Shown here: positions 1,861 to 52,151 of the stretch, piece by piece
How positions within the stretch are numbered: position 1 is the first letter of the stretch
Layout: each line of letters begins with the position of its first letter
Assembly: GCA_025558095.1 (NCBI GenBank)
Contig: JAIVFI010000036.1
Location: 471,028 to 535,027, forward strand
Direction: 5' to 3'
Origin: Hyaloraphidium curvatum SAG 235-1
Lineage: Eukaryota; Fungi; Monoblepharomycota
Length of the DNA: 64,000 nucleotides
Program-made: the position numbers and the translations under genes
Notes under the pieces: model-generated
What the model saw: the letters and a program-made list of their open reading frames with translations, nothing else
Databases searched by the model: none
What the model was told of the DNA's origin: nothing

Positions 1861-2433
1861 TCATTCGCTCAGCGCGGGCCAAAAGGCCCTCAGGTCCGGC
1901 AGCTCCGGCGGCTCCTGCGCTCCCGTCCACAGCTCTCCCAGCGACGGCGTCGGGCTGACCGACCCCGGCATCTGCCCCAGCTGTCCGCCGTCGTCGCTGT
2001 CCGGGGAAGCGGCGCGGCCTGGCCTGTTCGGGGCCTGGAGCGCAGCGGCAAGGGCGGCACCCGGGGGCTGGCCGGTGCTGCCCGCCGGGTCCGGCTTGTC
2101 CACAATTCTGGGTGCCAAATGGGAAGGCATCGAACTCCAAGGCTGCAGGGAGCCGGGCACACCGGCGGCCGCGCCCTGTTGCGGGGGGTTGCTAAGGCCC
2201 CATTGCGGCCTGTCTGGTTCCGACATCCGCCGGGCCACGGCCGAGACACATTGCCAACAACATCCATCGACGGGTCCCGGTTGGTGCGCGCAGGTAATGG
2301 CGGGCACGGCAGGCGCGGGGTTCGCGTGCAGGGCCGAGCTCCTCGAACGCGTTGCGGGCGGGGTTGGCCCCGCTGCGGTGCCCGACGCCGCGGCCTCCGC
2401 CGGCCGGCCGCGGTCGCTGCCGCCGCCGGTCAT
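1861..2433 (-). CDS. Cys/His motif-RVxF-LPDLxxFW family member A (no clear RVxF string; possibly degenerate)
   Basis: TCAHQPGPVDGCCWQC and C-terminal ELPDLRAFW are shared with the 25-36 kb array. Confidence 0.6.
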   Translation of the reverse strand: MTGGGSDRGRPAEAAASGTAAGPTPPATRSRSSALHANPAPAVPAITCAHQPGPVDGCCWQCVSAVARRMSEPDRPQWGLSNPPQQGAAAGVPGSLQPWSSMPSHLAPRIVDKPDPAGSTGQPPGAALAAALQAPNRPGRAASPDSDDGGQLGQMPGSVSPTPSLGELWTGAQEPPELPDLRAFWPALSE

Positions 2434-24780: not shown

Positions 24781-25424
24781 GCCTTTCGGATCGAGCAAGG
24801 AGGAGGATGTCAACAGAGGAAGGAAGCTTCGTCTTGGCGTACCATGAGTATGGCTGTGGAACTATACAATGAAGCATTCAGAGCCGTGTTTCTTTCCGAT
24901 ATCGATTCCTGGAAGCGGTGGGCGCCCGGCATGCTGGCCAGGGCGACGGTGGTCGGGCCGTTCAAGGAGATCCATAAGGCGGCGGGCACTGAACTCGGTA
25001 TGGTCGTTTCAAGTCGGTGAGGAAGATTGCGAACGGGTTTTGGGTCAATTGGGGCGCGTTCGATGTGCGGAGAAGGTGTGACTCCGTGTGACTCGGAGGG
25101 TCCCGGCCCCGGGAGATATCCTCGTTTTGGCGAGCCGCCGTTTCCACGCACGATCGCGGGATCGTTGCGTCCTCTGCAAAAATCTGCTCCCTCTCCAAGC
25201 GGGGACAGATTGTTCGGAGAGCTGGACGCAGATTGGACGGCCGGGGCGCCTTGGTCCACATCGTTGCTGGAGGACGCCGATAGGGCGCACTAGCAGTGAA
25301 TCGGGGTATCGGAGCCATGTTCGAACTCGGGGCAACTGCCCCACAACCTTGCTTTACATGCCACTCCATTCGCATGCGGTCCGACCAAGGGCCTATTGCG
25401 CGCGAAGTCAGGCGGCTGTCCTGC

Positions 25425-26096
25425 TCAAGTCGGCACCGCGACCGGCTCCCCGCGGCGTCCCGCCGCCCAGAACGCCTTCAGGTCGGGGAGCTTCCCCGCG
25501 TTGTCTCCGCGCTCGAGCCAGCCGAACGCCGAGAGGCTCCCCGAGGATGCCCTCCGCGGCCGATCCGGCGGCTCGGGGCCTGCGGAGAGCGCGCTGGCGG
25601 ATGCCCGCCTTGCCAGCTGCGCGGCAGCTTGCATCGCAGGAGGTGCTCCCGCGCCGCCATCGTCGTCCGAATCGTCCGAGTCGCCCTCGGGGAAGGAGGT
25701 CGCGAGCGCGGACCCCCGCTCGTAGTCATCCGGCGACCAGGTGGTCCCGAGCAGCACGGTGGCGTCGAACGCCACCTTCTTCCGCTGCCCGAGGCGCATC
25801 TGGGTACGGCGCAGCGCCGAGCGCACCGGGGACGGGTCGGCCGGCCTCCCCAGGGTCACCTCGCAGAGGCACAAACAGAGGCAGTGCCAGCACGCGCCCT
25901 CGCCGCCGGCGCAGCACTCCGCCTCCGCCGGCGCAGCGGGGGGGAGGTAGAGGTCCATCGAGTCTCGGGCGGTCGAAGCGGAGAAGGCAGGAAGGTGGGG
26001 GTAGAGGGAGGAAGGGGCGGCGCTCGGGGAGGCGCCGAGGAGCGTGCGGTCCGACGGCGCCGGCGACGCGGCGCGGGGGCCCGGGGTGACGGCCAT
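25425..26096 (-). CDS. Family member B: putative PP1-interacting protein
   Basis: RDSMDLY, ECCAGGEGACWHC, RKKVAFDATVLLGTTWSPDDYERG, RRASS and GKLPDLKAFW. Confidence 0.8.
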   Translation of the reverse strand: MAVTPGPRAASPAPSDRTLLGASPSAAPSSLYPHLPAFSASTARDSMDLYLPPAAPAEAECCAGGEGACWHCLCLCLCEVTLGRPADPSPVRSALRRTQMRLGQRKKVAFDATVLLGTTWSPDDYERGSALATSFPEGDSDDSDDDGGAGAPPAMQAAAQLARRASASALSAGPEPPDRPRRASSGSLSAFGWLERGDNAGKLPDLKAFWAAGRRGEPVAVPT

Positions 26097-26646
26097 CGCG
26101 GGAAGGCGGGGCGGGTGCTGCTGCAGTTGGTCCAGCGGTGCTCTGTGCGTTCAGGATGAAGTGTTGCGAGTGGTGGGCGTGCGCCCTTCGTGACGCGCCA
26201 GATCCTCACGCGCCCTGCGCCCCTGGCCGACCGACCCTCGAAAACCCCAAAGCGTCGGCGCCGTCGGAACAACCCGCTCCACGCTCGCGCTCCCGATCGC
26301 TCGCCCCAGTCATTCCGCCGCATCCCACGGACCCCTCCGCGCCGTCGCCCCCCCCCCCCCCCCCCCCCCTCGCCGCGCGATCCGAGTGTCCCAATGTGAC
26401 TCGCCGCACAGCCACGAGGCCCCTATGGCGAGGGCCCTGCCGCGTCATGGGCCGACCTCCGTCCGGCCGAAAAATACGCAAGGCACTCCGGGGCACTTCT
26501 TTGGAGCGAGATATGTGGCAGGTGCTCCGTGCACCGTGTCGGAAAGGGCGCAGCACGCTGGACGCGCCCGCGGCCATTCCTGCCATGATGCGCCGCCGAC
26601 AAACAAGCGGAGCACGGGATGTGTCACGGGACCGGGAATCAACGTA

Positions 26647-26684
26647 GAAGCCCAAACGTCCGTGGTGAAGCCCAAACGTCCGTG
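26647..26684. repeat. 18 bp direct repeat GAAGCCCAAACGTCCGTG, two copies
   Basis: Copies at 26647-26664 and 26667-26684. Confidence 0.75.
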
Positions 26685-26779
26685 CATTCCTGGGCTACAT
26701 GATGGCATGTCCGCGCCGACCCGGTATCTCCAACTGGCACGCCCCAATCAGGTCGTCCTCGACGCCGCGCGTCCCCTCA

Positions 26780-27430
26780 TCAAGTCAGCGCCTCCACCGA
26801 CCTCTCCCTTCTCCCGGGTCCCCAGAAGGTCTTCAGGTCCGGCATCTTCCCCGCATCCCCGTCCTGCTCGAGCCAAAAGGCCGAAAGCGTGCCCGACGAC
26901 GCCCTCCGCGGTGTGCACAGCGGGACCATCGTCGGGGAGCTGTAGGCCGGGGCCACCGGCCGGTGCGAGGGCGCCTGCAGGGGCGGAAAGAGCATTGCCA
27001 CGGCGGGCACGCCGGCGTCCGCGTCCGTCCCGTCGTCCGAGTCCCCGCCGGCGGAGGCAGCCGCCCGCCCGCAGCCCCGCTCGTACTCGTCCGCGGACCA
27101 CGTGGTGCCCACCGCCACCGCGGGGTCGAACGCCACCCTGCGCCTCTGCCCCGTGCGCGTCTCGCCCGGGTCGGTCGCCCCGCACGGCCACCGGTACCGG
27201 GAGATGCAGTGCCAGCACGCGCCCTCGCCCCCCGCGCAGCACTCCTCCTCCGCCGCCGAGGGGGCGTACAGCTCCATCGAGTCGCGGGCGCCGGGGGCGG
27301 TGAACGGCGGGAGCAGCCCGCGCTCCGCAGCGGGGGGGAACAGCGCCGCCGGGGCGGAGAGGGGCGAGCCGCCGAGGGTGCGGTCCGAGGGCGTCGGGGA
27401 CACCGCGCGGGCGGGCTGCGAGACGACCAT
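26780..27430 (-). CDS. Family member C: putative PP1-interacting protein
   Basis: RDSMELY, ECCAGGEGACWHC, RRRVAFDPAVAVGTTWSADEYERG, RRASS and GKMPDLKTFW. Start placed at ATG 27430 by homology to B. Confidence 0.8.
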   Translation of the reverse strand: MVVSQPARAVSPTPSDRTLGGSPLSAPAALFPPAAERGLLPPFTAPGARDSMELYAPSAAEEECCAGGEGACWHCISRYRWPCGATDPGETRTGQRRRVAFDPAVAVGTTWSADEYERGCGRAAASAGGDSDDGTDADAGVPAVAMLFPPLQAPSHRPVAPAYSSPTMVPLCTPRRASSGTLSAFWLEQDGDAGKMPDLKTFWGPGRRERSVEALT

Positions 27431-28022
27431 GGCGCGAGTGCGGGTGGCGGGCCGGCGGCGGGCGAACGGTCGTGCGGGTGGGGACGTCGGGCACCCTGGC
27501 GGCGCATGCGGATGACCGCATTGGTGCATCCCGATGCCGACCGACCCTTGCCGACCGACCCTTCTTGTCGGCGCCCCCCCGCCCCGCACCCGGCAGCCGG
27601 TTCCATGCACAAAACGCGCCTTAGGATCACCGCGACCCCGTTCCCGGGCCCGCGAGCCCGCGGTCTCCCGCATCGAGGGCATCCGCGTCCGCACGACGCA
27701 CAGCCACGCCGACGGTCGGGTCTTGGTCGGCAGGTGCCAAGCGGGGGGCCGCGGAAGCCGCGCGGCCCGGGCGGACGGCTCGATGAACTCGGGGCGGCGT
27801 TGTGCGAATCAGGATCGATGGTCGTGGGGGTTACATCAACGAATATCTGCGTGACAGGTCTGGCGTGCAAAAGTGCGTGATGGAAGAGAGGAGTGCCGTC
27901 GCCGGTATCGTCCGTCGTCTGCCCGTCGCCGCGGGCGTGCGTGAGCAGTATGTCCTAGGGGATTGCTTCTCGAGCCGGTCCGTCGGCACGCCGCGGAAGC
28001 CGGTCCCCTTCGCGGCGGGACG

Positions 28023-28709
28023 TCATGCCGACGGCGCGCGCACGGCCGCCGCAACGGGCGCCGCCCAGAAGCTCCGGAGATCGGGAAGCTTCCCCACGTC
28101 GCCCTCGGCGTCGCACGCCCACGCGGGCAGCCAGGCCATCGAGTCCCGCCGGGGCGGTGGTGCCCCCGGCACCTCCGGCCCCTCCTCGTCCTCCTCCGCA
28201 TCCGTCTCCTCGCCTTCCTCGTCCTCGGCACCGAAGTCCGCGGCGGGGAAGTTTTCCGGGAGGTCGGGAAGGTGCGAGCCGCGGGGGTACTCCTCCCGCC
28301 CGTAGGTCTCCCAGGTCTGCACCGAGTCCGCGAACGAGACCTGCCTCGCGCACCGCGCGGCGGCGCCGCCGCGGGGGAGCGAGCGGGACCTGCCGTGTTC
28401 CCGCACGGGGGGCGAAGGAGGGGAGGGGTCCGAGCACCGCCGGGAAAGCAGCAGCAGGCACTCGTAGCAGTGGCCCCCCACGCCGTGCGGGTCGAGGTCC
28501 AGGCACCGCCCCGGGACGTGCGCCGCGCGGGGGGGGAGCAGCATCGAGTCCTTGACGGCGAGCGCGGAGAAGGGGGAGAGGAAGGCCGGGGGGTCGGGGG
28601 TGCCGACGAGGGTGCCCTCGGAGGGCGCGGGCGAGTCGGCGGGGGCGCCCCACGGCGCGGGCCGGGCGGTCGCGGGCAAGGCGGGGAGCAGCATAGCGGG
28701 GACGAACAT
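28023..28709 (-). CDS. Family member D: putative PP1-interacting protein
   Basis: KDSMLL, CLDLDPHGVGGHCYEC, RQVSFADSVQTWETYGREEYPRG and GKLPDLRSFW. Confidence 0.8.
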   Translation of the reverse strand: MFVPAMLLPALPATARPAPWGAPADSPAPSEGTLVGTPDPPAFLSPFSALAVKDSMLLPPRAAHVPGRCLDLDPHGVGGHCYECLLLLSRRCSDPSPPSPPVREHGRSRSLPRGGAAARCARQVSFADSVQTWETYGREEYPRGSHLPDLPENFPAADFGAEDEEGEETDAEEDEEGPEVPGAPPPRRDSMAWLPAWACDAEGDVGKLPDLRSFWAAPVAAAVRAPSA

Positions 28710-29708
28710 CGCTTCTGCGCCGGCGGTGCGGGGTTCGGTTGGGCAAGGGCAGGTGTTTGTCGGCGCCGATCGGCCCCTGAGGGACTACAACGCTGCGCCA
28801 GCTGACGACATCAGCAACGTCCTATCATCCAAAAACAGCTCGGGCTCCGTCTTTCACCCCGGGATTCGCGCGGCTGCGTGCACATCGACACCATCGCGGC
28901 CCGATTGCCGGCGCCGGCCGCCCTCGCCCGCCGCGAAAATGCAACTCCCCTGGTCCCCTCCCCCAGCCGCCGGTTCAGGGCCCCCCGACCTCCCCTTCGC
29001 AACGCGATCGGCGCGCCCATCGCTCCGGCCGACCACCCCGACAGCATCGGAAAAGCCCGCTTCGTGCCCCCCGGGGCGCCCCGTGCGACCGATCCGCGGC
29101 GCCGGGGGGTGCGGCGGTGTCCCACCCCCTTGGCGCCAGATCCCTTCGCGCGTGCTTTGGAATCACATGGCCGGCGGATGCGTGAGGTTTTTCCGGGTCG
29201 GAAGGGGGGGGGAAGGGGTGCATCGTGCGACGCGGATGGCGGGGGATCGTGGATCGGGGCATCAATGGCGGGACGCACGGGGCGGGGGCAGCGCGGTGGA
29301 GGACGGAGGTGGGGGTTTTGGCGATTTGGGGATGGCAATATCGCTGCCGCATGGGCGACCGCAGCGGCGCCGTTGCCGGTGGCGTGCCCGAGCTACTGGA
29401 GTCCACATATCAGGCTCATGGTGATGCGGATGCGCGCGCGATTGGGCGGTGCCGGACCGCGGCGCATCGTGCGGCATGCGGCGGGCGGTGTGCACCCCGG
29501 CTCGCCGGCCGGCACGCGGACGATGGGACGTCGGAGGAAGGACAGGGCAGTTGAACAAGACACAGTCGCGTTCAGATCGCAGAGATGGTACATTGACCAG
29601 GCATCAGTCCCCAGGTTTGCAGCGCGTCCCTCCCCCACCGTCCACGGGCGGCTCCTCGCGCCCTCCCTCCTCCTCCCCTCCATCATCCCTCCCCCCCGCC
29701 AAGGATCG

Positions 29709-30275
29709 TCACGCGGCGACCGGCTTCCCCTGCCAGAACGCCCTCAGGTCCGGCAGCGCCTCCCCGCCCTCCTCGAGCCAGCTGAAGGCCGCCAGCGTCG
29801 CCGACGAGGAACTCCTCGCCGGCGGCTGGAGCTTGGCGGAGGGCACCCCGTCGTCGCCGCCGCACTCGGAGTCCGAGTCGCCCTCGTCGAAGGAGGAGGT
29901 GCGCGCGCAGCCGCGGTCGTACTCCTCGGGGGACCACGTGGGGAAGACGGCGGGGGCGGGGTGGAAGGCCACCCTGCGGCGGGGGTTGCGTGGCAGCGAC
30001 GCGCGGCGCAGGGCGGGGCGTGCGGGCCCGGCGGGGGAGGAGCCGCGGGAGAGGGTGACGGCGGTGAGGCAGTGCCAGCAGTGTCCGTCGGCATCGCCGG
30101 CGCAGGCCGCGTGCGGCGCCGGCTGGCCGTACAGCTCCATCGAGTCGCGGGCGACGCCGGCGGAGAACGCCGGCAGCGGCGGAAACAGCGCCGCGGGCGC
30201 GGCGGAGGGGGAGCCGGCGAGGGTGCGCTCCGACGGCGCGGGCGACGCGGCCCGCGAAGACGGGTGGGCGACCAT
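29709..30275 (-). CDS. Family member E: putative PP1-interacting protein
   Basis: RDSMELY, HAACAGDADGHCWHC, RRRVAFHPAPAVFPTWSPEEYDRG and ALPDLRAFW. Start placed at ATG 30275 by homology. Confidence 0.8.
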   Translation of the reverse strand: MVAHPSSRAASPAPSERTLAGSPSAAPAALFPPLPAFSAGVARDSMELYGQPAPHAACAGDADGHCWHCLTAVTLSRGSSPAGPARPALRRASLPRNPRRRVAFHPAPAVFPTWSPEEYDRGCARTSSFDEGDSDSECGGDDGVPSAKLQPPARSSSSATLAAFSWLEEGGEALPDLRAFWQGKPVAA

Positions 30276-31196
30276 CGCGGAGCGGCGCGGAGAGTGCGGT
30301 GCGGTGTCGCGGTAAGCGTGCAGTCTCGCGTTTGTGGGTGTGTGGTGTTCGGCCCGAGCAGCGCCCTGTCGGGCTGCCCTTGGGGGCGCGATGCCATCTG
30401 ACGCAGGTCCAGGCCCCGCCGGACCGATATCGGCCGACCCCTTAAATTCGCAAACGCCCCTGCAGCGGCCTCCTTCTACCCGATCCGCCCGATCTCTCCG
30501 TCCGCCCACCCTCCCACACCTGCCGCACCCTCCCGCCCTGGTCCACCCGCCCCCCGGCCCCCCAAGACCGCGAGATCCCAATGCGTCCCCGCTGACTCGA
30601 CCGCACAGCCCCGAAGGGCCAAGCCCAGGCCCCGCCAAATCGGCCAAAGGACCCCGCCCCGGCCCCAGGGACGCCGCGACCTCCGCGTCGCCGCCCCCGC
30701 CGTTCTGCAGGCACCGGGCGGCGCGCGGCGCCGGGGGCTGCGGGGAAGGGCGGGCGCGGGGAGCCCGGACTTCCCGGCGGGCGCGCAGCCGCGCGGCGCG
30801 GAGCCAAAGTCGGAGGCCCCAACACCGCCCGCAAAGGGAAGCCATGTCTCCCCGCCGCGTCGGGAGAACCTCCAGGCGGGGCGGACCTGCGTCCTCCGCG
30901 GGGGCAGTGAACGGGCGGCGGTCGCCGAGGAGCCTCGAAAGGACGGACCGCGCTCGCTACGGGTGTGCCTGTCACGTCAATCGCCACGCGATGCGCATCG
31001 CTTCCCCTCTTTTCGTCCCGATCTACGTCCTGCCGCCCGACTTCGACGTCCGTTCGCGCGCCCGTCGAGCGCCGGCGCCCCGCCGGCCACGAGGAGCAAA
31101 AGCGCAACCTCCTCGCCCCGCGTTCAACCGCGTTCCCCTGATCCCATGGAGAAGATCCCAGGATGCCGCCGCCGCGTTCCCACCCGGACGCTCCCC

Positions 31197-31257
31197 GCAT
31201 CGCACACCGTCTTGCCTGCATCGCACCCCGTCTTGCCTGCAACGCACCGCCTTGCTA
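31197..31257. repeat. About three copies of a 21 bp tandem repeat (GCATCGCACnCCGTCTTGCCT)
   Basis: Seen directly in the spacer between family members E and F. Confidence 0.7.
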
Positions 31258-32224
31258 CCCCAGCCCCGCGCGCAGCCCGTCCGCCAGGTTCCGGCTCCGT
31301 CTCGGCGACGGTTTGCTTGCCCCGTGGCGCATCCCGGCCCCAGATGTGCCGGCGGAGAAGCCCGGAGAAGATGCAAGATGCTGTGCAGGCGAGCCGGGAG
31401 CTCCGTCGGGAGCTAGAGCGCGGGGACGTGGCCGTGATCCGAGGGGCAGGGCACGGGGCGGGGAGCGTCCTCCGCGTCTGCGGCCGCCCATTGCGATGCC
31501 CGATCCCCGCCCGCAGCAATTGCCAAAATACGCCACGTCCGCACCGCCCTCCCCTCCGCCGCGTCCGATTCCGATGCCTCGGCGCCAAGGCGTGGCGCGT
31601 GACTAGACGCGCTCTCGACCCCGCCCGCGTTTCCCCCGCCGGCCGCACGAACGGCTCGAATTCCGGAGGGGCGCACTCTCGGGGACTTGGATCGGGCCGC
31701 TCGATGGCGCGCAGCGGATTGGCGGTTCGGCGCACCAAGGCCGGCGAGCCGCACGCACCGGCCTTGCTGCCCCCAAACGGCGCACGCGGCGCCCCTCCGA
31801 CCCGCTCCGGCTCCCCGCAGCCCCGCCTCCCAACGCTTCCATGCATGGTGCCGACCCCGGGCGTCGTCGACCCGCGGCGGCCACGGCGTTGCGCAAAAGA
31901 GGGTCAGATGCGTCGCGATCTTCGGGCCCCGCCTGGGCTCCGCAGCCCGCCCGCGGGGCGGACCGGATCGCGCACTCCCCCCGCTCCACCCCGCCCTCGG
32001 TCGGTCCGGGTAGCTCGGGGGATAATTCCGCACCGTTTTTCTGGGCGGGAGCACGCGCGGGAAAGGGGTGCTTGCGACGGGCGGGCCTGACTGTGCGGCC
32101 GACGGTCGGGCCGGCGGCGTCCAGAGCCGCCGCCGACGCCCTTGCGGGGCCCCGAATTCGCGCCCCTGCCGCGTTCCGAACATCCGAGGACGCAGAGGGA
32201 CGCACCCCGGGAGCAGCGGGCGGG

Positions 32225-32821
32225 ATGCCGGACGGCGGGCCGGACGCCCCCGCGCAGAGGGCGCCGCTCCCCGCGCGGCGCAGCGCGGCAACGGCGGCAT
32301 CGCACGCCGGTCCCGCGAACGCCGGCATCGCGCCGGCAGCCCCGCTCCCCGCCGCGCCCCCGGCCCCGCACCCGGCCGCAACCTGCGCGCACCGCAACCC
32401 GCCGGACTGGCACATCGAGGGCTACTGCTACCCCTGCCTCGTCGCCCTGCTCTCCCGGAGGAGGGCGTCGGACCCGTCCCCGGACCCTGCTCCCCGCGCC
32501 GGCCCGCCCAAGAATAAGCCCCGGCGGAGCGTGTCGTTCGCGCCGCACGTCACGGCGTGGGAGACCTGGTCCCCCGAGGAATACGACCGCGGGCTGCCGC
32601 CCACGTGGACCCCGCGCCCGCCGTCCCCCGCCGGGACGGACTCCACGGAGGTCGAGGCGCCGCATGCGGGGCCGGGGAGCCCGGGGAGCACGCTGGGGGG
32701 GCTGCGGACGGGCGCGCCGGAGCCGGGGTTGCCGGACCTGAAGGGGTTCTGGGGGGCGGGAGGGGGGGACGGGGGGTGGGATTGGGGGTGGTTGGAGGTG
32801 GGGAGGGCTGCGACCGCCTGA
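32225..32821 (+). CDS. Family member F: putative PP1-interacting protein
   Basis: CAHRNPPDWHIEGYCYPC, RRSVSFAPHVTAWETWSPEEYDRG and GLPDLKGFW. Start is uncertain. Confidence 0.78.
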   Translation: MPDGGPDAPAQRAPLPARRSAATAASHAGPANAGIAPAAPLPAAPPAPHPAATCAHRNPPDWHIEGYCYPCLVALLSRRRASDPSPDPAPRAGPPKNKPRRSVSFAPHVTAWETWSPEEYDRGLPPTWTPRPPSPAGTDSTEVEAPHAGPGSPGSTLGGLRTGAPEPGLPDLKGFWGAGGGDGGWDWGWLEVGRAATA

Positions 32822-33754
32822 CGTGGAGGGGGCTTGTATTGGGCATGGACGAGGGTGCGGGCGGGCGCGGGAGGAGCGAGGGCGGGAGGAAGGGTGGATG
32901 TTGGTGGAGTGTGTGGGGACTACGGCACGGGATCGGGTGCGGAGTTGGGAATGCGGTTTGGCGATGGGATGCGGTCGGCCTTGTAGCTGCTGTTGCGCGG
33001 TCGGGAGGTGTAGTCGCTGTACATACGCAGAGTGCACGGTTCGTTGGCGGATCGGACCGATTCCCTCGTCCTCGGTGACATGCAGCTCGCCAGTCTAGCC
33101 GCCTCGAAGTGCCCCGCCGCCGGACCGGTCCCGCCTCCCTCCGCCTCCCCGGGCGGAGAACCCCCGCCCAGAAACGCCTGCGGCCCGCCCTCCCGCCGTT
33201 GACTAACATTCGCCCGCCCCCGACCCCCGAATACCGCGCCCCGACGCGCCCTCGGGTCCGGAACAATCCGTGACGCAGCGCCTGGCCCCCCGAACCGTAC
33301 CCGGGGCGGCAATCCGCGGTGTCCGGGGACCGGCGGTCGGCCGACGCCCGCGTGGAGGGCGAGGGGGCCGGGAAGCCGGACCGCGGGATCCGCGGGGGTG
33401 TGGGAGCGAGGGGGAGGAGGGGCGCGGGGGTCCGCGTTCCCGCCGGGTCCTGGGGGTCGGTGTTTGGCTTTGGGGGTTGCGAATTTGGCTTTGGGGATCC
33501 TCGCGTCGGCAGGGACGCAGCTCCGTCCGCGTGTTGCCGGGCCCCGGGCGCATCCCCGGGCGGCGGTGCGGGGCTGGGAGGTCGGGAGCATCGGGAGCAC
33601 GATGGGCGAGCACCGCGGGCAGGGAGTGCGGGGAGCGCGTCGGACGGCGTCGGCATCGGGCACCGGAGCTTCGAGGACGCAGACCGGTCCGGACGCGTCC
33701 CATCGCCGACCGGGCCCAAACTGCCCGACCGCGCCCGCCGACGTCGATCCCGCG

Positions 33755-34483
33755 ATGAGTGCCCCCATGCCGGTCCCGAAGCTCCCCCCCGCCTCGCCGG
33801 GCCCGCACCGCCGCTGCACCGCGCCCGCGCTGCCCCTCCGCCTCGCCTTCCCCGGCGCCACACCCGCCGCCCCCTCTCCCGCCCGCCAGCGCTCCCAATC
33901 GGACCCTCCCGCAGGATGGCCGCCTTCGGTGCTGCCCCCGCGCGATGAGCACGCCCCGCTGCCGGCACCCTCCCCGCGCTGCGGCCACGCGGACGACGGG
34001 GGGGAGGGGTGGTGCTTCCTCTGCCTCTCGTCCTCCCCGCCCTCCGTCCCCGGCACGGACGCCCACCCCGCACTCGAGCGATCGGCCAGCGCCTCCTGCT
34101 CCTCCTCCTCCTCCTCCCTCCGCGCGGGCAGCTCCGCCACGCTGGGCCGCTCGCGCTCCGTCTCGTTCAGCCCGAGGATCGAGTGCGGGACCACGTGGGG
34201 CAAGGAGGACTACGAGCGCGGGCTGCGGCCCGCTCCGGCGTCCGGCGACCCGGACGACTCCACCGACGACGACGAGGTGCAAGGGGACGCGGAGGGGGAG
34301 TCGGACGAGGCGTCGCTCGTCGGCTCCGACGGGCGGAACCCTTGCCCCTCCCCCGCTCCGGTCGCGCGCGGCGGCTCGTGCTTCGAAGCCTGGCGCGGCC
34401 CAGAGGACGGGCGGCTGCCGGATTTGCGGAGCTTCTGGGGCGGCCCGGGGAGGGGGTCCGGGGAGGCGGGGAGGGCGCGGTGA
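33755..34483 (+). CDS. Family member G: putative PP1-interacting protein
   Basis: CGHADDGGEGWCFLC, RSVSFSPRIECGTTWGKEDYERG and GRLPDLRSFW. Confidence 0.8.
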   Translation: MSAPMPVPKLPPASPGPHRRCTAPALPLRLAFPGATPAAPSPARQRSQSDPPAGWPPSVLPPRDEHAPLPAPSPRCGHADDGGEGWCFLCLSSSPPSVPGTDAHPALERSASASCSSSSSSLRAGSSATLGRSRSVSFSPRIECGTTWGKEDYERGLRPAPASGDPDDSTDDDEVQGDAEGESDEASLVGSDGRNPCPSPAPVARGGSCFEAWRGPEDGRLPDLRSFWGGPGRGSGEAGRAR

Positions 34484-34745
34484 ACGGCTCGGAAAGGGAA
34501 GAGGGGTGCGGTGGGGGAGAAAATCTGATGGCAAGGACGGCTCGAATCACTAAAGGAAAAAGGGCGAGAGGCTTAATGTACATAGGATGAGGCATGGATG
34601 CTAGGTTCGCGAAACGTGACGTGACGACGCCCCCCTTCCTCGCCGGCGCCTCCGCGGCGCAGCCCCACCGTCAGCCATTGCCCCCTCTCCGCCCGCCACG
34701 GGCGTGCCGACCAGGCGGCAGGTGTTCCACGTGTCCGCAGATCCG

Positions 34746-35339
34746 TCACCGCAGCGCCCGCGCCCCCGTTCGCGGCACACCCGCGTCGCCCCCTTCCCCC
34801 ATATTCTCCGCCTCCCTTGCCCCACTGCCGAGGGTCCGGACCCCCGAATCGATGCCCCGCGCGTACTCATCCCCGCTCCACGTGGTGCCCTCCCGCACGC
34901 CCCCGAAGCTCACCGCGCGCTTGGGCTTCCCCGGCGCTGCCGTGCGGAGCGCGGGTTTGCCGGGCGGGGGGAGGGACGGCCGGCGTCCGGGCGACGGTGC
35001 GGGTGCGGGGGAAGGCGACCTCGTGAGGAGCTGGAGGAGCCCGGGGGAGGACGGAAGCCCCGGGGAGGGGAGCGCCACGGAGGATGCAGGGGACGCGGGG
35101 GGCGGCGCGCCGGACCACCGCCCGGGGGGAACCGCCACGGGCTGCGCCGGCCCGTCCTCCCCGTCCGAGCCCCGAGGCAGGGGGCGGGAAGCGAAGCACG
35201 CGAAGCACGCGCCCTCCCCCGCGCCGTGCGCGCACTCCCCGGGCCAGGCCCACTCCGCGGGCGGGCTGGGCAGCCCCGACGCCGCTTTGACGTTCGCGTC
35301 CGCGGGGAGCAAAGGCGGCAACGTGCTCGCGGCGGGCAT
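34746..35339 (-). CDS. Family member H (no LPDL tail)
   Basis: CAHGAGEGACFAC and KPALR..KRAVSFGGVREGTTWSGDEYARG. Confidence 0.75.
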   Translation of the reverse strand: MPAASTLPPLLPADANVKAASGLPSPPAEWAWPGECAHGAGEGACFACFASRPLPRGSDGEDGPAQPVAVPPGRWSGAPPPASPASSVALPSPGLPSSPGLLQLLTRSPSPAPAPSPGRRPSLPPPGKPALRTAAPGKPKRAVSFGGVREGTTWSGDEYARGIDSGVRTLGSGAREAENMGEGGDAGVPRTGARALR

Positions 35340-35998
35340 CCTGCAAGGGGGGGTGCTGTCGCCCGGCCGACGCCCGGGAGCGACGGAACCCTTCGCAACG
35401 CAATGCGGCTTGGCGCGGCCCGTGCGGCCCGCGCGCAAACGCACGGGGCGCTTCGCGGCGCCCCAAAACCGGCCCGTAAGTGGCCGACGGAGGGCGGAAG
35501 GGTTGCCGATCGCGCGGCCGATGCGCGGGATAGGGGGGGAGGGGGCGGAGGGAAGCGCGATCCCCCCGCCGGGCGGTGCGCGGAGATCGGACGCCGAAGG
35601 CCGGGCTTTGCGCACCCGGCGGACGGGCGAGGACGGAGCGGTGGTCGGAACATTGTAGTGCCTGCAAACGGATACCTGTCGTTGGGTGCGGGCCGTGCCG
35701 GGGAGCTAACTGTTCGCGGAAGGCGGTGGTGACCGGGCACCGTCGGCATTCGCGGCACCGACGGAGCGAGTGCCGCCCTCGTCCGAGCACCGGCAGTCCG
35801 CCTCAGATCGTCCGTCTGCGCCGGCAAGGGCGCCGGTGGGGTGCGCCTCGGTCCTCTCGGGGGGAGGGAAGGTTCGTTGCGCCCCGGTGTCAATCGGCCC
35901 GCGATGATGGGGAGCCGCGGCACCGCCGTCGGCCACACGCGGCGTGCTAGAGGGGAAAGGAGCAGGTCCGTCCGCCAGCTCGCTGCCTGAACGGCCGG

Positions 35999-36592
35999 CT
36001 AGGAACCCGCCGCGCCGTGCGGCGTCCCCGCGGGGGGCACCCCGTCCTCCTCGCCCTCGCCGCCCTCCCCGTCCTCCCCCGGGAGCGTCCAGAACGCCAT
36101 CACCATCCCCCGCTCGTAGTCGTCCTTGCCCCAGGTGGTCCCGGGGTGCACGGCGCCGAAGCTCACGCGCTTCCGGAGCGGCGGGGGCGTCTTCCCCGCG
36201 CCGCGGGCGGGCAACGCGTCCAGCGGGGCGCGGGCCGCAAAGGGCAGCGAGGGCCGCCGCTGCGGCGGCAGCGGGGCGTCGTCGGACGGGCGCCGGGCGA
36301 ACGGCAGGGAGGGCCTGTCGGGCGGGGCGGCGCCCGGGAACGACGCCGGCGGCGACGCGGGCAGCGGGGCCCCCGCCCATCGCCCGGGCGGCACCTGCAC
36401 GGGCTCCGCACGGTCGTCGACCGCGCCGGGCGGCCCCCTCCCGGGTGGGCGGTCCGCGGCGGCGAAGCACGCGTAGCATGCGCCCTCGCCGTTGCCGTGC
36501 TCGCAGCCGTCCCCCGGCGGGCTCGGCAGCCCCGCGTCCGCGGGCGCGGGGCGCAGCTGCGGCGGCGGGGACGCGGTGCCGTGGGGCGGCAT
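35999..36592 (-). CDS. Family member I (no LPDL tail)
   Basis: CEHGNGEGACYAC and RKRVSFGAVHPGTTWGKDDYERG. GLPSPP and VPPGRW are shared with H. Confidence 0.78.
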   Translation of the reverse strand: MPPHGTASPPPQLRPAPADAGLPSPPGDGCEHGNGEGACYACFAAADRPPGRGPPGAVDDRAEPVQVPPGRWAGAPLPASPPASFPGAAPPDRPSLPFARRPSDDAPLPPQRRPSLPFAARAPLDALPARGAGKTPPPLRKRVSFGAVHPGTTWGKDDYERGMVMAFWTLPGEDGEGGEGEEDGVPPAGTPHGAAGS

Positions 36593-51155: not shown

Positions 51156-52151
51156 TTATCCCCATCCGGGGTTCCCGTCGACGGCATCGACGGTCCTCAC
51201 GGCAGTGGTCCCCGACGTCCCCCTCAACGGCTCCAACCAAGCGCCCCAGTCCACATCCCCCCAATCCCGCCCATCGTCGTCGCCCTCCTCCTCCGGGCCC
51301 AGCATCCCGAACCGCGCATAGTCCTCCTTTGCCCACGTGTAGCTGCACAGCACGCTCGCGGAGAACAAGACCCTCTTGCCGCCCTCAGCGTGCGGCTTGT
51401 CCGGAGAAGGGTCGTACGCGACGCGGTGGTCGTCGTGGTGGTGCGGCTCGATGTACGCCCGGGGCAGCGTGGGCGGGCGGTAGTCCCCGCGCCAGGTCCT
51501 CGGCATGGGAGGCGATGGGTTTGTTTCGGCCTCGGGAGGGGGCGCGAACGGGTCGAACGGCGGCGGTTCGCGCGCGTCGGGGTCGTCGTCGAACACGGCG
51601 TTGTGCAGGTCCTCCTCCTCCCCCGAATCGTAGCCGGGGGCGGCGGGCGGCGCCTTGGCCGCCTCCTCCGCGAGCTCCTCGCGAGCCAGGTCGGCCTGCT
51701 GTGCCGCGAAACACTCCCAGCAGAACCCGTCCTCGTCGGCGCTACCGTGCGGACATGTGGCCGACGGGGTGAAGGCTGGCAGCCAGATGTCGTTGCCCTT
51801 CTTCAAAGGTTCGAGCTCGGGAGCGGCCGGGGCGCTGCCGCCCACCAGGGAAGGGCGGCGGCCGGGCGGGGCCCCCTGCGTGCCGCGCGAGTAGAGCTCG
51901 AGGCTGTCCTGCGCGGTGCCCAGCGACGGCACCCGCAGCGTGCCCGACGAGCCCGCGGACGCGAGCGACGAGTCCGAGCCGCCGCGCGTCGGCGACGTGC
52001 TCAGGAGGTTCAGAAGGATGGCGCGCTGCACCGACGGCCGCCGCCCCGCCGCCCGCGGCGCCGCCTTCTCTCCGCCGTCGCCGGCCATGCTGTAGGAGAG
52101 GGACACGCCGCTGTCCGTCGCCGAGGTCTCGCGGAGGTGCGACGGGTTCAT
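51156..52151 (-). CDS. Family member M (dispersed, longer copy): putative PP1-interacting protein
   Basis: QDSLELY, two RRPS, CPHGSADEDGFCWEC and GKRVLFSASVLCSYTWAKEDYARFG. Confidence 0.78.
   Translation of the reverse strand: MNPSHLRETSATDSGVSLSYSMAGDGGEKAAPRAAGRRPSVQRAILLNLLSTSPTRGGSDSSLASAGSSGTLRVPSLGTAQDSLELYSRGTQGAPPGRRPSLVGGSAPAAPELEPLKKGNDIWLPAFTPSATCPHGSADEDGFCWECFAAQQADLAREELAEEAAKAPPAAPGYDSGEEEDLHNAVFDDDPDAREPPPFDPFAPPPEAETNPSPPMPRTWRGDYRPPTLPRAYIEPHHHDDHRVAYDPSPDKPHAEGGKRVLFSASVLCSYTWAKEDYARFGMLGPEEEGDDDGRDWGDVDWGAWLEPLRGTSGTTAVRTVDAVDGNPGWG

What the first reader, a model, noticed from the sequence alone, without database searches (positions are those of the whole stretch)
25425..36592. 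Subtelomeric array of an apparently undescribed family of putative PP1-regulatory proteins
Seen: eight intronless ~190-240 aa ORFs in 11 kb (B-E minus, F-G plus, H-I minus), plus dispersed copies at 1861-2433 and 51156-52151. They are very divergent except for ordered short motifs: DS[ML]xLY in some; a Cys/His motif; [RK]xVxF-x7-8-T[WY][SGA]x[DE][DE]YxR in nine of ten; an acidic patch; RRxS; and [LM]PDL[KR]xFW in seven of ten. Known: RVxF followed by T[YW]SxxxYDR is the extended PP1-binding string of spinophilin/neurabin ([24 protein letters not shown], from memory), Phactr and fungal Bni4. SALR/PALR upstream in B, E and H resembles a SILK motif. Inference: this is a lineage-specific, diversifying panel of PP1 targeting or inhibitory subunits. 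Such regulators are normally single-copy housekeeping genes, not tandem subtelomeric families. It is the best candidate for a new system in this window.
Basis: partly seen in the sequence, partly recalled or inferred. Interest (0 to 1): 0.9.

Follow-up and report, generated by a model that had tools for sequence, protein, structure and literature searches.

The report
Expanded fungal PP1-docking protein family
Near a chromosome end, the freshwater fungus Hyaloraphidium curvatum carries a row of small, mostly unstructured proteins. They belong to an unannotated family of at least 87 genes, and nearly all carry the same short docking sequence that spinophilin and related proteins use to grip protein phosphatase 1.

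Summary
Eight small genes (188-242 aa) lie at 25.4-36.6 kb and two more at 1.9 and 51 kb. All share a CxH..GxC[WYF]xC motif. Nine of ten carry an RVxF...T[WY]xx[DE]YxR string and seven end in LPDL[KR]xFW.

The PP1 reading is supported in silico:
- A profile of the string hits only PP1-bound peptides in the PDB (spinophilin, neurabin, KNL1, PPP1R15A/B, DP71L).
- A PP1 complex model scores 0.93, best control 0.00 (mark reached by 51 of 78 solved complexes and 2 of 108 mismatched pairs), with canonical contacts. It may be recalled from solved complexes.

The array is not the whole family. The genome holds at least 87 copies, 71% within 100 kb of contig ends. In about 40 of them the same module ends a 750-900 aa protein whose helical domain resembles the fungal transcription-factor regulatory domain (Cep3, Upc2). 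A relative of unknown name has both forms.

The paralogs are old (48% identity at most). Crude dN/dS is 0.46-0.81, so diversifying selection is not shown. The SILK likeness is not family-wide. Binding is untested and the transcript evidence is provisional. I rate it a new variant of a known kind. Another reader of this scan noted the same family elsewhere in this genome (s1-712733).

The parts
25425..26096 (-). Gene B, 223 aa: DSMDLY, Cys motif (25881-25898), PP1 string (25716-25781), acidic run, RRxS, LPDLKAFW (25467-25490)
   Evidence: A 736-nt contig of run X1 lies on 25326-26061 with no differences or gaps. The AF2 model is disordered (pTM 0.22), with local pLDDT peaks at the Cys motif and the PP1 string.
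26780..27430 (-). Gene C, 216 aa: DSMELY, Cys motif (27206-27223), PP1 string (27077-27142), MPDLKTFW (26822-26845)
   Evidence: An X1 contig lies on 26678-27490 with no gaps and ends 60 nt upstream of the ATG at 27430.
28023..28709 (-). Gene D, 228 aa: Cys motif (28458-28475), PP1 string with RQVSF (28281-28346), long acidic run, LPDLRSFW (28065-28088)
   Evidence: X1 contigs lie on 27829-28236 and 28390-28759.
29709..30275 (-). Gene E, 188 aa: DSMELY, Cys motif (30069-30086), PALRR, PP1 string (29913-29978), LPDLRAFW (29733-29756)
   Evidence: Its tail (residues 43-147 of window:29712-30152:-) was docked on PP1: ipSAE 0.93 in three runs, best control 0.00.
32225..32821 (+). Gene F, 198 aa: Cys motif (32420-32437), PP1 string (32525-32590), LPDLKGFW (32729-32752)
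33755..34483 (+). Gene G, 242 aa: Cys motif (34007-34024), Ser-rich linker, PP1 string (34154-34219), LPDLRSFW (34415-34438)
34746..35339 (-). Gene H, 197 aa: Cys motif (35196-35213), Pro-rich linker, PALRT, PP1 string (34857-34919); no LPDL motif
   Evidence: The representative protein P0162 (197 aa) carries the same Cys motif and PP1 string and has the same length as this gene.
35999..36592 (-). Gene I, 197 aa: Cys motif (36467-36484), Pro-rich linker, PP1 string (36110-36172); no LPDL motif
   Evidence: It is 45% identical to H.
1861..2433 (-). Gene A, 190 aa: Cys motif (2248-2265) and LPDLRAFW (1879-1902), but the PP1 string is lost
51156..52151 (-). Gene J, 331 aa: DSLELY, Cys motif (51711-51728), PP1 string (51312-51377); no LPDL motif
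63848..64000 (+). Telomeric TTAGG/TTAGGG repeats at the contig end, which fix the array as subtelomeric
   Evidence: The window is G000:C36:471028-535027 and C36 is 535027 bases long.

Best explanation
The ten ORFs are real, intronless genes for short, intrinsically disordered proteins. They belong to a large family so far seen only in the Hyaloraphidium lineage. The family is defined by one ordered module:
- a CxH-x(5-10)-GxC[WYF]xC knuckle, probably zinc-binding;
- a variable Ser/Pro-rich linker;
- an RVxF, phi-phi, [TS][WY]xx[DE]Y and Arg string;
- an acidic run;
- in many members, LP[DN]L[KR]x[FY]W at or near the C-terminus.

The string is a PP1 docking site of the spinophilin/neurabin/Phactr type. 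Val and Phe enter the RVxF groove. The next hydrophobic residues add a strand beside PP1 strand beta14. The Tyr-x-Arg pair reaches the Pro24/Tyr70/Asp71/Asn271 site of the C-terminal groove. So each protein should hold one PP1 catalytic subunit and cover its C-terminal groove.

Most family members carry this module after a roughly 600-residue helical domain of the fungal transcription-factor regulatory type. There the tail would recruit PP1 to that protein or its partners. The subtelomeric short genes are tail-only versions. By inference they compete for PP1, or bridge PP1 to whatever binds the knuckle and the C-terminal motif, and phosphorylation of the Ser inside RVSF or of the RRxS sites may regulate them.

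Shown: the genes, the motifs, the family size, the likeness to PP1-bound peptides, and a passing complex model. Inferred: binding in the cell, the direction of the effect on PP1, and the roles of the knuckle and the LPDL motif.
For: - Motifs occur only in these frames and GC3 is 0.80-0.97 there.
- Contigs of run X1 lie without differences or gaps on B, C and D, and intergenic bins are empty.
- The 172-position family profile hits only spinophilin and neurabin among 177,635 PDB sequences (best E 0.0024), aligned on their PP1-binding string.
- The 40-position string profile has 8 PDB hits at E up to 10, and all are peptides solved on PP1: spinophilin, neurabin, CASC5/KNL1, PPP1R15A, PPP1R15B and DP71L.
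- Pfam PDZ_5 (PF17817) hits the same stretch weakly in two members. It hits above threshold in a basidiomycete protein that the family profile also reaches.
- Complex model of PP1 with the gene E tail: ipSAE 0.93 in three runs, best control 0.00; the mark was reached by 51 of 78 solved complexes and 2 of 108 mismatched pairs; runs agree in at least 79% of contacts; partner pLDDT at least 53. The interface joins partner 59-64, 67-75 and 77-86 to PP1 242-243, 255, 261 and 288-300 (RVxF groove and beta14), to PP1 23-25, 70-71 and 269-275, and to PP1 133-136.
- The 23-25/70-71/269-275 and 133-136 stretches cover the residues reported for Phactr1 Y534/R536 (P24, Y70, D71, N271) and for the Trp motif (I133) in PMC7599070.
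- The exons of the H. curvatum PP1 gene read by eye keep the stretches that form the RVxF groove, by comparison with the full-length PP1 sequences.
- The family has at least 87 copies.
- A second organism keeps the short architecture.
Against: - No binding experiment exists.
- The complex model may be recalled from solved PP1-peptide complexes, so it shows likeness, not that these copies bind.
- The PP1 chain used was from another chytrid (P0039), not H. curvatum.
- Profile E-values against the PDB are modest (0.002-0.003).
- Run X1 is only guessed to be RNA and is held as contigs. 29 of 37 pieces are 95-99% alike and half of the laid pieces run on into unlike sequence.
- Most family members have Tyr-Pro-Ala-Arg, one residue longer than the Tyr-x-Arg of spinophilin and Phactr1.
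- No conserved Trp motif follows.
- Gene A has lost the string, and H, I and J lack the LPDL motif, so some copies may be decaying.
Confidence: 0.68

Rival explanations
1. The short subtelomeric ORFs are decaying remnants of the 3' ends of the long genes, copied into a chromosome end, and have no function of their own.
For: - The same module ends the long proteins.
- Gene A lost the PP1 string and H, I and J lack the LPDL motif.
- Whole-gene dN/dS is fairly high, 0.46-0.81.
- Subtelomeres collect gene fragments (general knowledge).
Against: - The frames are open. The motifs are kept while the linkers have diverged to 25-48% identity, which points to selection on the motifs.
- GC3 is coding-like.
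- Contigs of a probable RNA run cover B, C and D.
- Short forms with their own N-terminal motifs exist in a second organism.
- In the module tree all ten window genes fall on one side of a split (SH-aLRT 87) together with other short forms and two long ones (L022, P0209), while 46 of the 48 long-form tails lie on the other side (weakly resolved).
Confidence: 0.1
2. The conserved string is not a PP1 site. It serves another partner or forms part of a small zinc-dependent fold, and the likeness to spinophilin is convergence of a short motif.
For: - RVxF-like motifs are common in proteomes (general knowledge).
- PDB E-values are only about 0.003.
- The commonest form, Tyr-Pro-Ala-Arg-Ser, differs from the Tyr-x-Arg of known strings.
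- The predictor could be recalling known complexes.
Against: - The match spans about 25 ordered positions, not four.
- Every PDB hit of the string profile is a PP1-bound peptide.
- The modelled contacts fall on the published residues.
- Both the partner-swap and the PP1-swap controls scored 0.00.
Confidence: 0.12
3. The proteins are mainly PP1 substrates rather than regulators. The string brings PP1 to remove phosphates from the Ser-rich linker and RRxS sites of the same molecule. In the long forms this switches the transcription-factor-like domain, and the short forms are merely co-regulated relatives.
For: - Ser-rich linkers and RRxS sites flank the string.
- The long forms carry a regulatory-type helical domain.
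- Substrates that carry their own RVxF are known, e.g. KNL1, which is among the PDB hits.
Against: Nothing here separates substrate from regulator. The short forms have no domain to be switched. The RRxS sites are not conserved across the family.
Confidence: 0.1

Closest known systems
Spinophilin / neurabin-1 PP1-binding domain (PDB 3EGG, 3EGH, 3HVQ, 9GSU; front part of Pfam PF17817)
   Same: An ordered RVxF, hydrophobic strand, [ST]-Tyr/Trp-Ser, acidic-Tyr-x-Arg string. These are the only PDB hits of the whole-module profile. The modelled docking covers the RVxF groove, beta14 and the C-terminal groove.
   Different: No PDZ domain, actin-binding region or coiled coil. No helix of the spinophilin type after the string. 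Different flanking motifs (Cys knuckle, LPDL[KR]xFW). Most members have Tyr-Pro-Ala-Arg rather than Tyr-Asp-Arg.
Phactr1-4 and yeast Bni4 PP1-binding domains (RVxF-phiphi-R-W string; PMC7599070)
   Same: The same kind of extended string, with a Tyr-x-Arg pair that contacts PP1 D71, Y70, P24 and N271. It also sits near the C-terminus of the protein.
   Different: No RPEL repeats (no Pfam hit). No conserved Trp motif. No basic C-terminal helix that remodels the hydrophobic groove. Bni4 itself could not be compared because no sequence was on hand.
PPP1R15A/B (GADD34, CReP), ASFV DP71L and KNL1 PP1-docking peptides
   Same: They share the RVxF-phiphi part. They are the weaker PDB hits of the 40-position profile.
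   Different: Only the first half aligns. No eIF2alpha-binding or kinetochore parts. E-values are 0.08-1.9, so this is likeness of a motif, not homology.
Fungal Zn2Cys6 transcription-factor regulatory domain (Pfam PF04082 Fungal_trans; Cep3 of CBF3, Upc2)
   Same: The long relatives of the window genes have a helical domain whose best structural matches are Cep3 (Z 10.2 and 9.2 over 386 and 371 residues) and Upc2 (Z 8.6). ESM Atlas Fungal_trans clusters match at TM 0.42-0.62. One member hits PF04082 at 2.8e-8.
   Different: No Zn2Cys6 DNA-binding cluster was seen. Pfam misses 16 of the 17 long members scanned. A PP1-docking tail on this domain was not found described in my searches. The window's short genes lack the domain altogether.

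Membership tests
PP1-interacting proteins with an RVxF-phiphi-R(-W) string | RVxF motif, [RK]-x(0,1)-[VI]-{P}-[FW] | tested here: met
   Present in 9 of 10 window genes and 84 of 113 representative hits. In the model Val61 and Phe63 contact PP1 242-243, 261 and 289-292.
PP1-interacting proteins with an RVxF-phiphi-R(-W) string | phi-phi motif a few residues after RVxF that adds a strand to PP1 beta14 | tested here: met
   A V-x-V or V-F pair follows 4-6 residues after the Phe. In the model partner residues 67-72 pair with PP1 293-297.
PP1-interacting proteins with an RVxF-phiphi-R(-W) string | Arg motif with a stabilising Tyr (Tyr-x-Arg) reaching PP1 D71/N271 | tested here: met
   The nine window genes that carry the string have Y-[DEAP]-R. 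In the model Tyr78 contacts PP1 70-71 and the interface includes 23-25 and 269-275, matching PMC7599070. Most long members have Y-P-A-R, shifted by one residue.
PP1-interacting proteins with an RVxF-phiphi-R(-W) string | Trp motif about six residues after the Arg | tested here: not met
   No conserved aromatic residue at that spacing. The model does bring residues 81-86 near PP1 133-136.
PP1-interacting proteins with an RVxF-phiphi-R(-W) string | Physical binding to the PP1 catalytic subunit | not testable with these tools
   Only a structure prediction is available: ipSAE 0.93, best control 0.00; mark reached by 51 of 78 solved complexes and 2 of 108 mismatched pairs.
Spinophilin/neurabin family | PDZ domain after the PP1-binding string | tested here: not met
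   Pfam gives only a weak PF17817 hit confined to the string (profile positions 16-52 of 71). No other PDZ model hits.
Phactr family | RPEL actin-binding repeats overlapping the RVxF | tested here: not met
   No Pfam hit in any of the ten proteins at E up to 1.
SILK-RVxF class of PP1 regulators | [GS]IL[RK] motif N-terminal to RVxF | tested here: inconclusive
   The strict motif occurs in 3 of 92 members and the loose form in 8 of 92, against 0.9 and 3.6 expected. In the model E residues 43-49 (with PALR) touch PP1, whose interface includes 53-59 and 166-169. That this PP1 site is the SILK pocket is from my memory.
Fungal_trans (PF04082) domain proteins | About 250-600-residue helical regulatory domain | tested here: not met
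   The window's short genes have no such domain. Their long relatives do by fold, and one does by HMM.
Bni4/Afr1 fungal Glc7-targeting subunits | Sequence homology beyond the PP1 string | not tested
Only the literature statement that Phactr and Bni4 PP1-binding domains are related and interchangeable was read.

The most novel reading that the evidence does not exclude
H. curvatum and its relatives may have built a lineage-specific PP1 signalling layer. In it, about 40 DNA-binding-domain-less proteins with a transcription-factor regulatory fold each carry their own PP1 dock. A second set of about 45 tail-only proteins, concentrated at chromosome ends, would act in trans. Their Cys knuckle and C-terminal LPDL[KR]xFW motif would bind the long proteins or a shared partner, so that they deliver, withhold or titrate PP1. 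This would be a paralogous decoy/adaptor system for a phosphatase, with no described counterpart that I could find.
Probability: 0.2. Interest if true: 0.75.

Novelty: new variant of a known kind. Interest (0 to 1): 0.6.

Why it matters
PP1 gains its specificity from docking proteins. Those known are many unrelated families that share only short motifs, and they are usually single-copy. Here one paralogous family supplies at least 87 proteins with the same extended dock, in a genome where only one PP1 gene and one PP1-like gene matched the PP1 N-terminal domain model. About half are attached to a transcription-factor-type regulatory domain and about half are free-standing and subtelomeric.

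If binding is confirmed, three things follow. It would be a natural series of diverged RVxF-phiphi-Arg strings for studying PP1 docking rules. It would be an example of phosphatase recruitment built into a fungal regulator family. It would also give two further conserved motifs (the Cys knuckle and LPDL[KR]xFW) whose partners are unknown.

Tried and rejected
- **Word-indexed protein search** with the module alignment returned one hit only. Low-complexity words swamped it. The exhaustive HMM search was used instead.
- **Foldseek against the PDB** with the long-protein model gave nothing below E 0.06. VIA-align and the ESM Atlas gave the Cep3, Upc2 and Fungal_trans matches.
- **hhalign** of the long-family alignment against the one PF04082-positive member gave only 27.6% probability over 58 columns. 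Homology of the long domains therefore rests on fold and language-model likeness, not on sequence.
- **SILK motif as a family feature** is rejected: 8 of 92 against 3.6 expected.
- **LPDL[KR]xFW as a PP1 contact** has no support from the complex model, where only residue 145 of the tail is in the confident interface. A likeness to the MyPhoNE motif is recalled from memory. The paper I read did not give the consensus, so I make no claim.
- **Diversifying selection** is not shown. NG86 dN/dS is 0.46-0.81. This is crude, because GC3 near 0.9 distorts dS.
- **Recent tandem duplication** is rejected. The best pair is 66% identical in DNA.
- **The run accession of the second organism** was not found in any paper.
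- **Literature search** for RVxF with subtelomeric gene families found nothing relevant.
- **The H. curvatum PP1 gene (L032)** is split by introns. I searched one open stretch by reference and used a full-length chytrid PP1 from that search for the complex.

Full report
**What is there.** The window is G000:C36:471028-535027, the last 64 kb of a 535-kb contig that ends in TTAGG/TTAGGG repeats. Earlier notes name the genome Hyaloraphidium curvatum. I confirmed this: public H. curvatum proteins returned by my searches sit on contigs of exactly the lengths of C41 and C25.

A six-frame regex scan finds GxC[WFY]xC, the RVxF...T[WY]xx[DE]YxR string, [LM]PDL[KR]xFW and DS[ML]xLY only inside these ORFs, in the stated frames. 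Third-position GC is 0.80-0.97 in those frames. After trimming to the start methionines shared with paralogs, the eight array genes are 188-242 aa.

**Are they genes?**
- One public run, guessed to be RNA and held as contigs, carries 39% of the sampled words of the array.
- Its contigs lie without a single difference or gap on B (25326-26061), C (26678-27490) and D (27829-28236 and 28390-28759).
- Several intergenic bins have no depth.
- This fits short, intronless transcripts. It is provisional, because contigs show neither strand nor ends and the run's type is not on record.

**The array is a small part of a large family.**
- A profile of the ten proteins finds 51 matches in the genome.
- A 40-position profile of the RVxF string alone finds at least 87, on about 30 contigs.
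- In about 38 of them the surrounding open frame is 460-1240 aa. The same ordered module (Cys motif, linker, RVxF string, acidic run, often LPDL[KR]xFW as the last residues) is the C-terminal tail of a 750-900 aa protein.
- 62 of the 87 lie within 100 kb of a contig end, where at most 34% of the genome lies. At cluster level this is 33 of 54, binomial p about 6e-5.
- Copies with short open frames are the most terminal, 40 of 49 within 100 kb.
- The window array is the largest cluster, nine copies in 26 kb. Five more copies lie just left of the window at C36:449-465 kb.

**Outside this genome.** An exhaustive HMM search of 1.84 billion representative proteins gave 113 hits at E up to 0.001 and 61 at E up to 1e-10. 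Both long and short forms appear, many with LP[DN]L[KR]x[FY]W as the exact C-terminus.

Of 30 hits whose origin I looked up, most come from Logan assemblies. All five Logan hits that I traced to a run come from SRR26194948. The three traced contigs whose composition I measured are 54% GC. The nearest named relative of a Na/H exchanger on one of them is H. curvatum, at 58% identity. Short forms are loosely clustered there too. A few hits come from metagenomes.

The only named non-Hyaloraphidium hits are weak and share just the string. One is a PDZ protein of the choanoflagellate Salpingoeca kvevrii. The other is a basidiomycete protein that UniRef calls 'Neurabin-1/2 PDZ domain-containing' because PF17817 hits its string. 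As far as I could see, the family is confined to the Hyaloraphidium lineage. Origins were looked up for only 30 of the 113 hits.

**Is the string a PP1 dock?** Four lines agree.
1. Pfam PF17817, built on neurabin/spinophilin, hits the string weakly in two members.
2. The 172-position module profile has only four PDB hits at E up to 10. All four are spinophilin or neurabin chains solved with PP1, aligned on their PP1-binding string (best E 0.0024).
3. The 40-position string profile has eight PDB hits at E up to 10. All are peptides solved on PP1: spinophilin, neurabin, CASC5/KNL1, PPP1R15A, PPP1R15B and DP71L.
4. A complex model of a chytrid PP1 (residues 1-300 of P0039) with the last 105 residues of gene E scored ipSAE 0.93 in three runs, against 0.00 for all three controls. 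The mark was reached by 51 of 78 solved complexes and 2 of 108 mismatched pairs. The runs agree in at least 79% of contacts and partner pLDDT is at least 53.

In the model the contacts are as follows. RRVAFH sits on PP1 242-243, 255, 261 and 288-292. The next residues pair with 293-297. The Glu-Tyr-Asp-Arg part sits on 23-25, 70-71 and 269-275. Residues 81-86 lie near 133-136. These are the sites described for the RVxF, phi-phi, Arg and Trp motifs of Phactr1, spinophilin, PNUTS and PPP1R15B (PMC7599070).

The model may be recalled from those solved complexes, so it shows likeness and not binding. The H. curvatum PP1 gene (L032) has introns. By eye its exons keep the groove-forming stretches.

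**The other motifs.**
- The Cys motif (C, usually H two residues later, then GxC-aromatic-xC) is nearly invariant across the family. It precedes a short helix in the model of B. That fits a small zinc knuckle, but nothing tested it.
- LPDL[KR]xFW is often the literal C-terminus and is not placed on PP1. Its partner is unknown.
- The SALR/PALR 'SILK-like' element occurs in only 8 of 92 members, against 3.6 expected.
- Protein B as a whole is predicted disordered (pTM 0.22), with local confidence peaks at the knuckle and the string. This is the usual picture for PP1-interacting proteins.

**The long relatives.** An AF2 model of one long member (P0131, with an alignment of 40 sequences) has pTM 0.80. 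It shows an all-helical domain at residues 25-636 and a disordered tail.
- Its best matches among 48,161 PDB representatives are Cep3 of the CBF3 core (Z 10.2 and 9.2 over 386 and 371 residues) and Upc2 (Z 8.6).
- The two best ESM Atlas structural matches are Fungal_trans clusters, TM 0.42-0.62.
- A language-model search gives Fungal_trans clusters at 0.93.
- One H. curvatum member hits PF04082 directly at 2.8e-8.
- Sequence profile comparison between the two kinds of long member is weak, and Z values near 10 are middling for helical proteins.

So I rate the Fungal_trans assignment as likely, not proven. No Zn2Cys6 cluster was seen at the N-termini.

**Evolution.** The paralogs in the array are old. 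The best pair (B and C) is 48% identical in protein and 66% in DNA. NG86 dN/dS is 0.46-0.81. This fits relaxed purifying selection on disordered linkers with conserved motifs, and does not fit diversifying selection.

In a weakly resolved module tree, all ten window genes fall on one side of a split (SH-aLRT 87). Other short forms and two long ones join them there. Most long-form tails fall on the other side. My labels of origin in that tree were guessed from composition and are partly wrong.

**Mechanism.** The most likely reading is that each family member holds one PP1 through the RVxF-phiphi-Tyr-x-Arg string and thereby covers the C-terminal groove, as spinophilin does. In the long proteins this puts PP1 on a regulator-type domain. 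The short, tail-only proteins would compete for PP1 or bridge it to the partner of the knuckle and C-terminal motif. Ser within RVSF and the RRxS sites are candidate off-switches; that reading comes from general knowledge of PP1 docking and is not tested here.

**Novelty.** The docking string is known. The family, its size, its attachment to a Fungal_trans-like domain, the tail-only paralogs and their subtelomeric bias were not found described.

Noticed in passing
window 63848-64000: The telomere is mostly TTAGG units, the type common in arthropods, with a few TTAGGG units at the inner end.
   Followed up: no
L031 (G000:C25:298157-301300), minus strand: A second PP1-like phosphatase gene has a long Ser/Ala/Pro-rich N-terminal extension that begins MGQSGSK. 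This looks like a Ppz-type enzyme with a possible myristoylation site. Only two loci in the genome match the PP1 N-terminal domain model.
   Followed up: no
window 25300-31200 (run X1): 29 of the 37 contig pieces laid are only 95-99% alike, and half of what was laid runs on into unlike sequence. Yet the paralogs in the window are at most about 75% identical in DNA. A second haplotype, strain differences or closer paralogs elsewhere would each explain it.
   Followed up: partly
window 31002-31200 and onward: A 778-nt contig of the same run starts in the 1.9-kb gap between the divergent genes E and F, where no family member lies. This is an unassigned transcript or gene.
   Followed up: no
L058 3001-4245 and 4955-5950 (Logan SRR26194948): In the related organism a traced short member (P0177, 414 aa) is followed on the same strand by a 331-aa gene, probably a second member (the family hit P0190 has that length). 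Both lie next to a homeodomain gene. L039 also holds two or three members within 10 kb.
   Followed up: partly
P0202 (NCBI KAI9014037.1, contig C25): A public H. curvatum model named as a GMA12/MNN10 galactosyltransferase-domain protein carries the same RVxF string at residues 458-497. Either the string occurs in another architecture or two genes were fused in the model.
   Followed up: no
G000:C33:168529-168615 and G000:C53:14037-14123: Two hits have identical score, open-frame length (785 aa) and one in-frame TGA. The 20.7-kb contig C53 may be a duplicate or alternative haplotype of part of C33.
   Followed up: no
G000:C36:449188-465209: Five more family members, two or three of them long, lie just left of the window. 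The terminal 86 kb of this chromosome therefore holds about 15 copies.
   Followed up: partly
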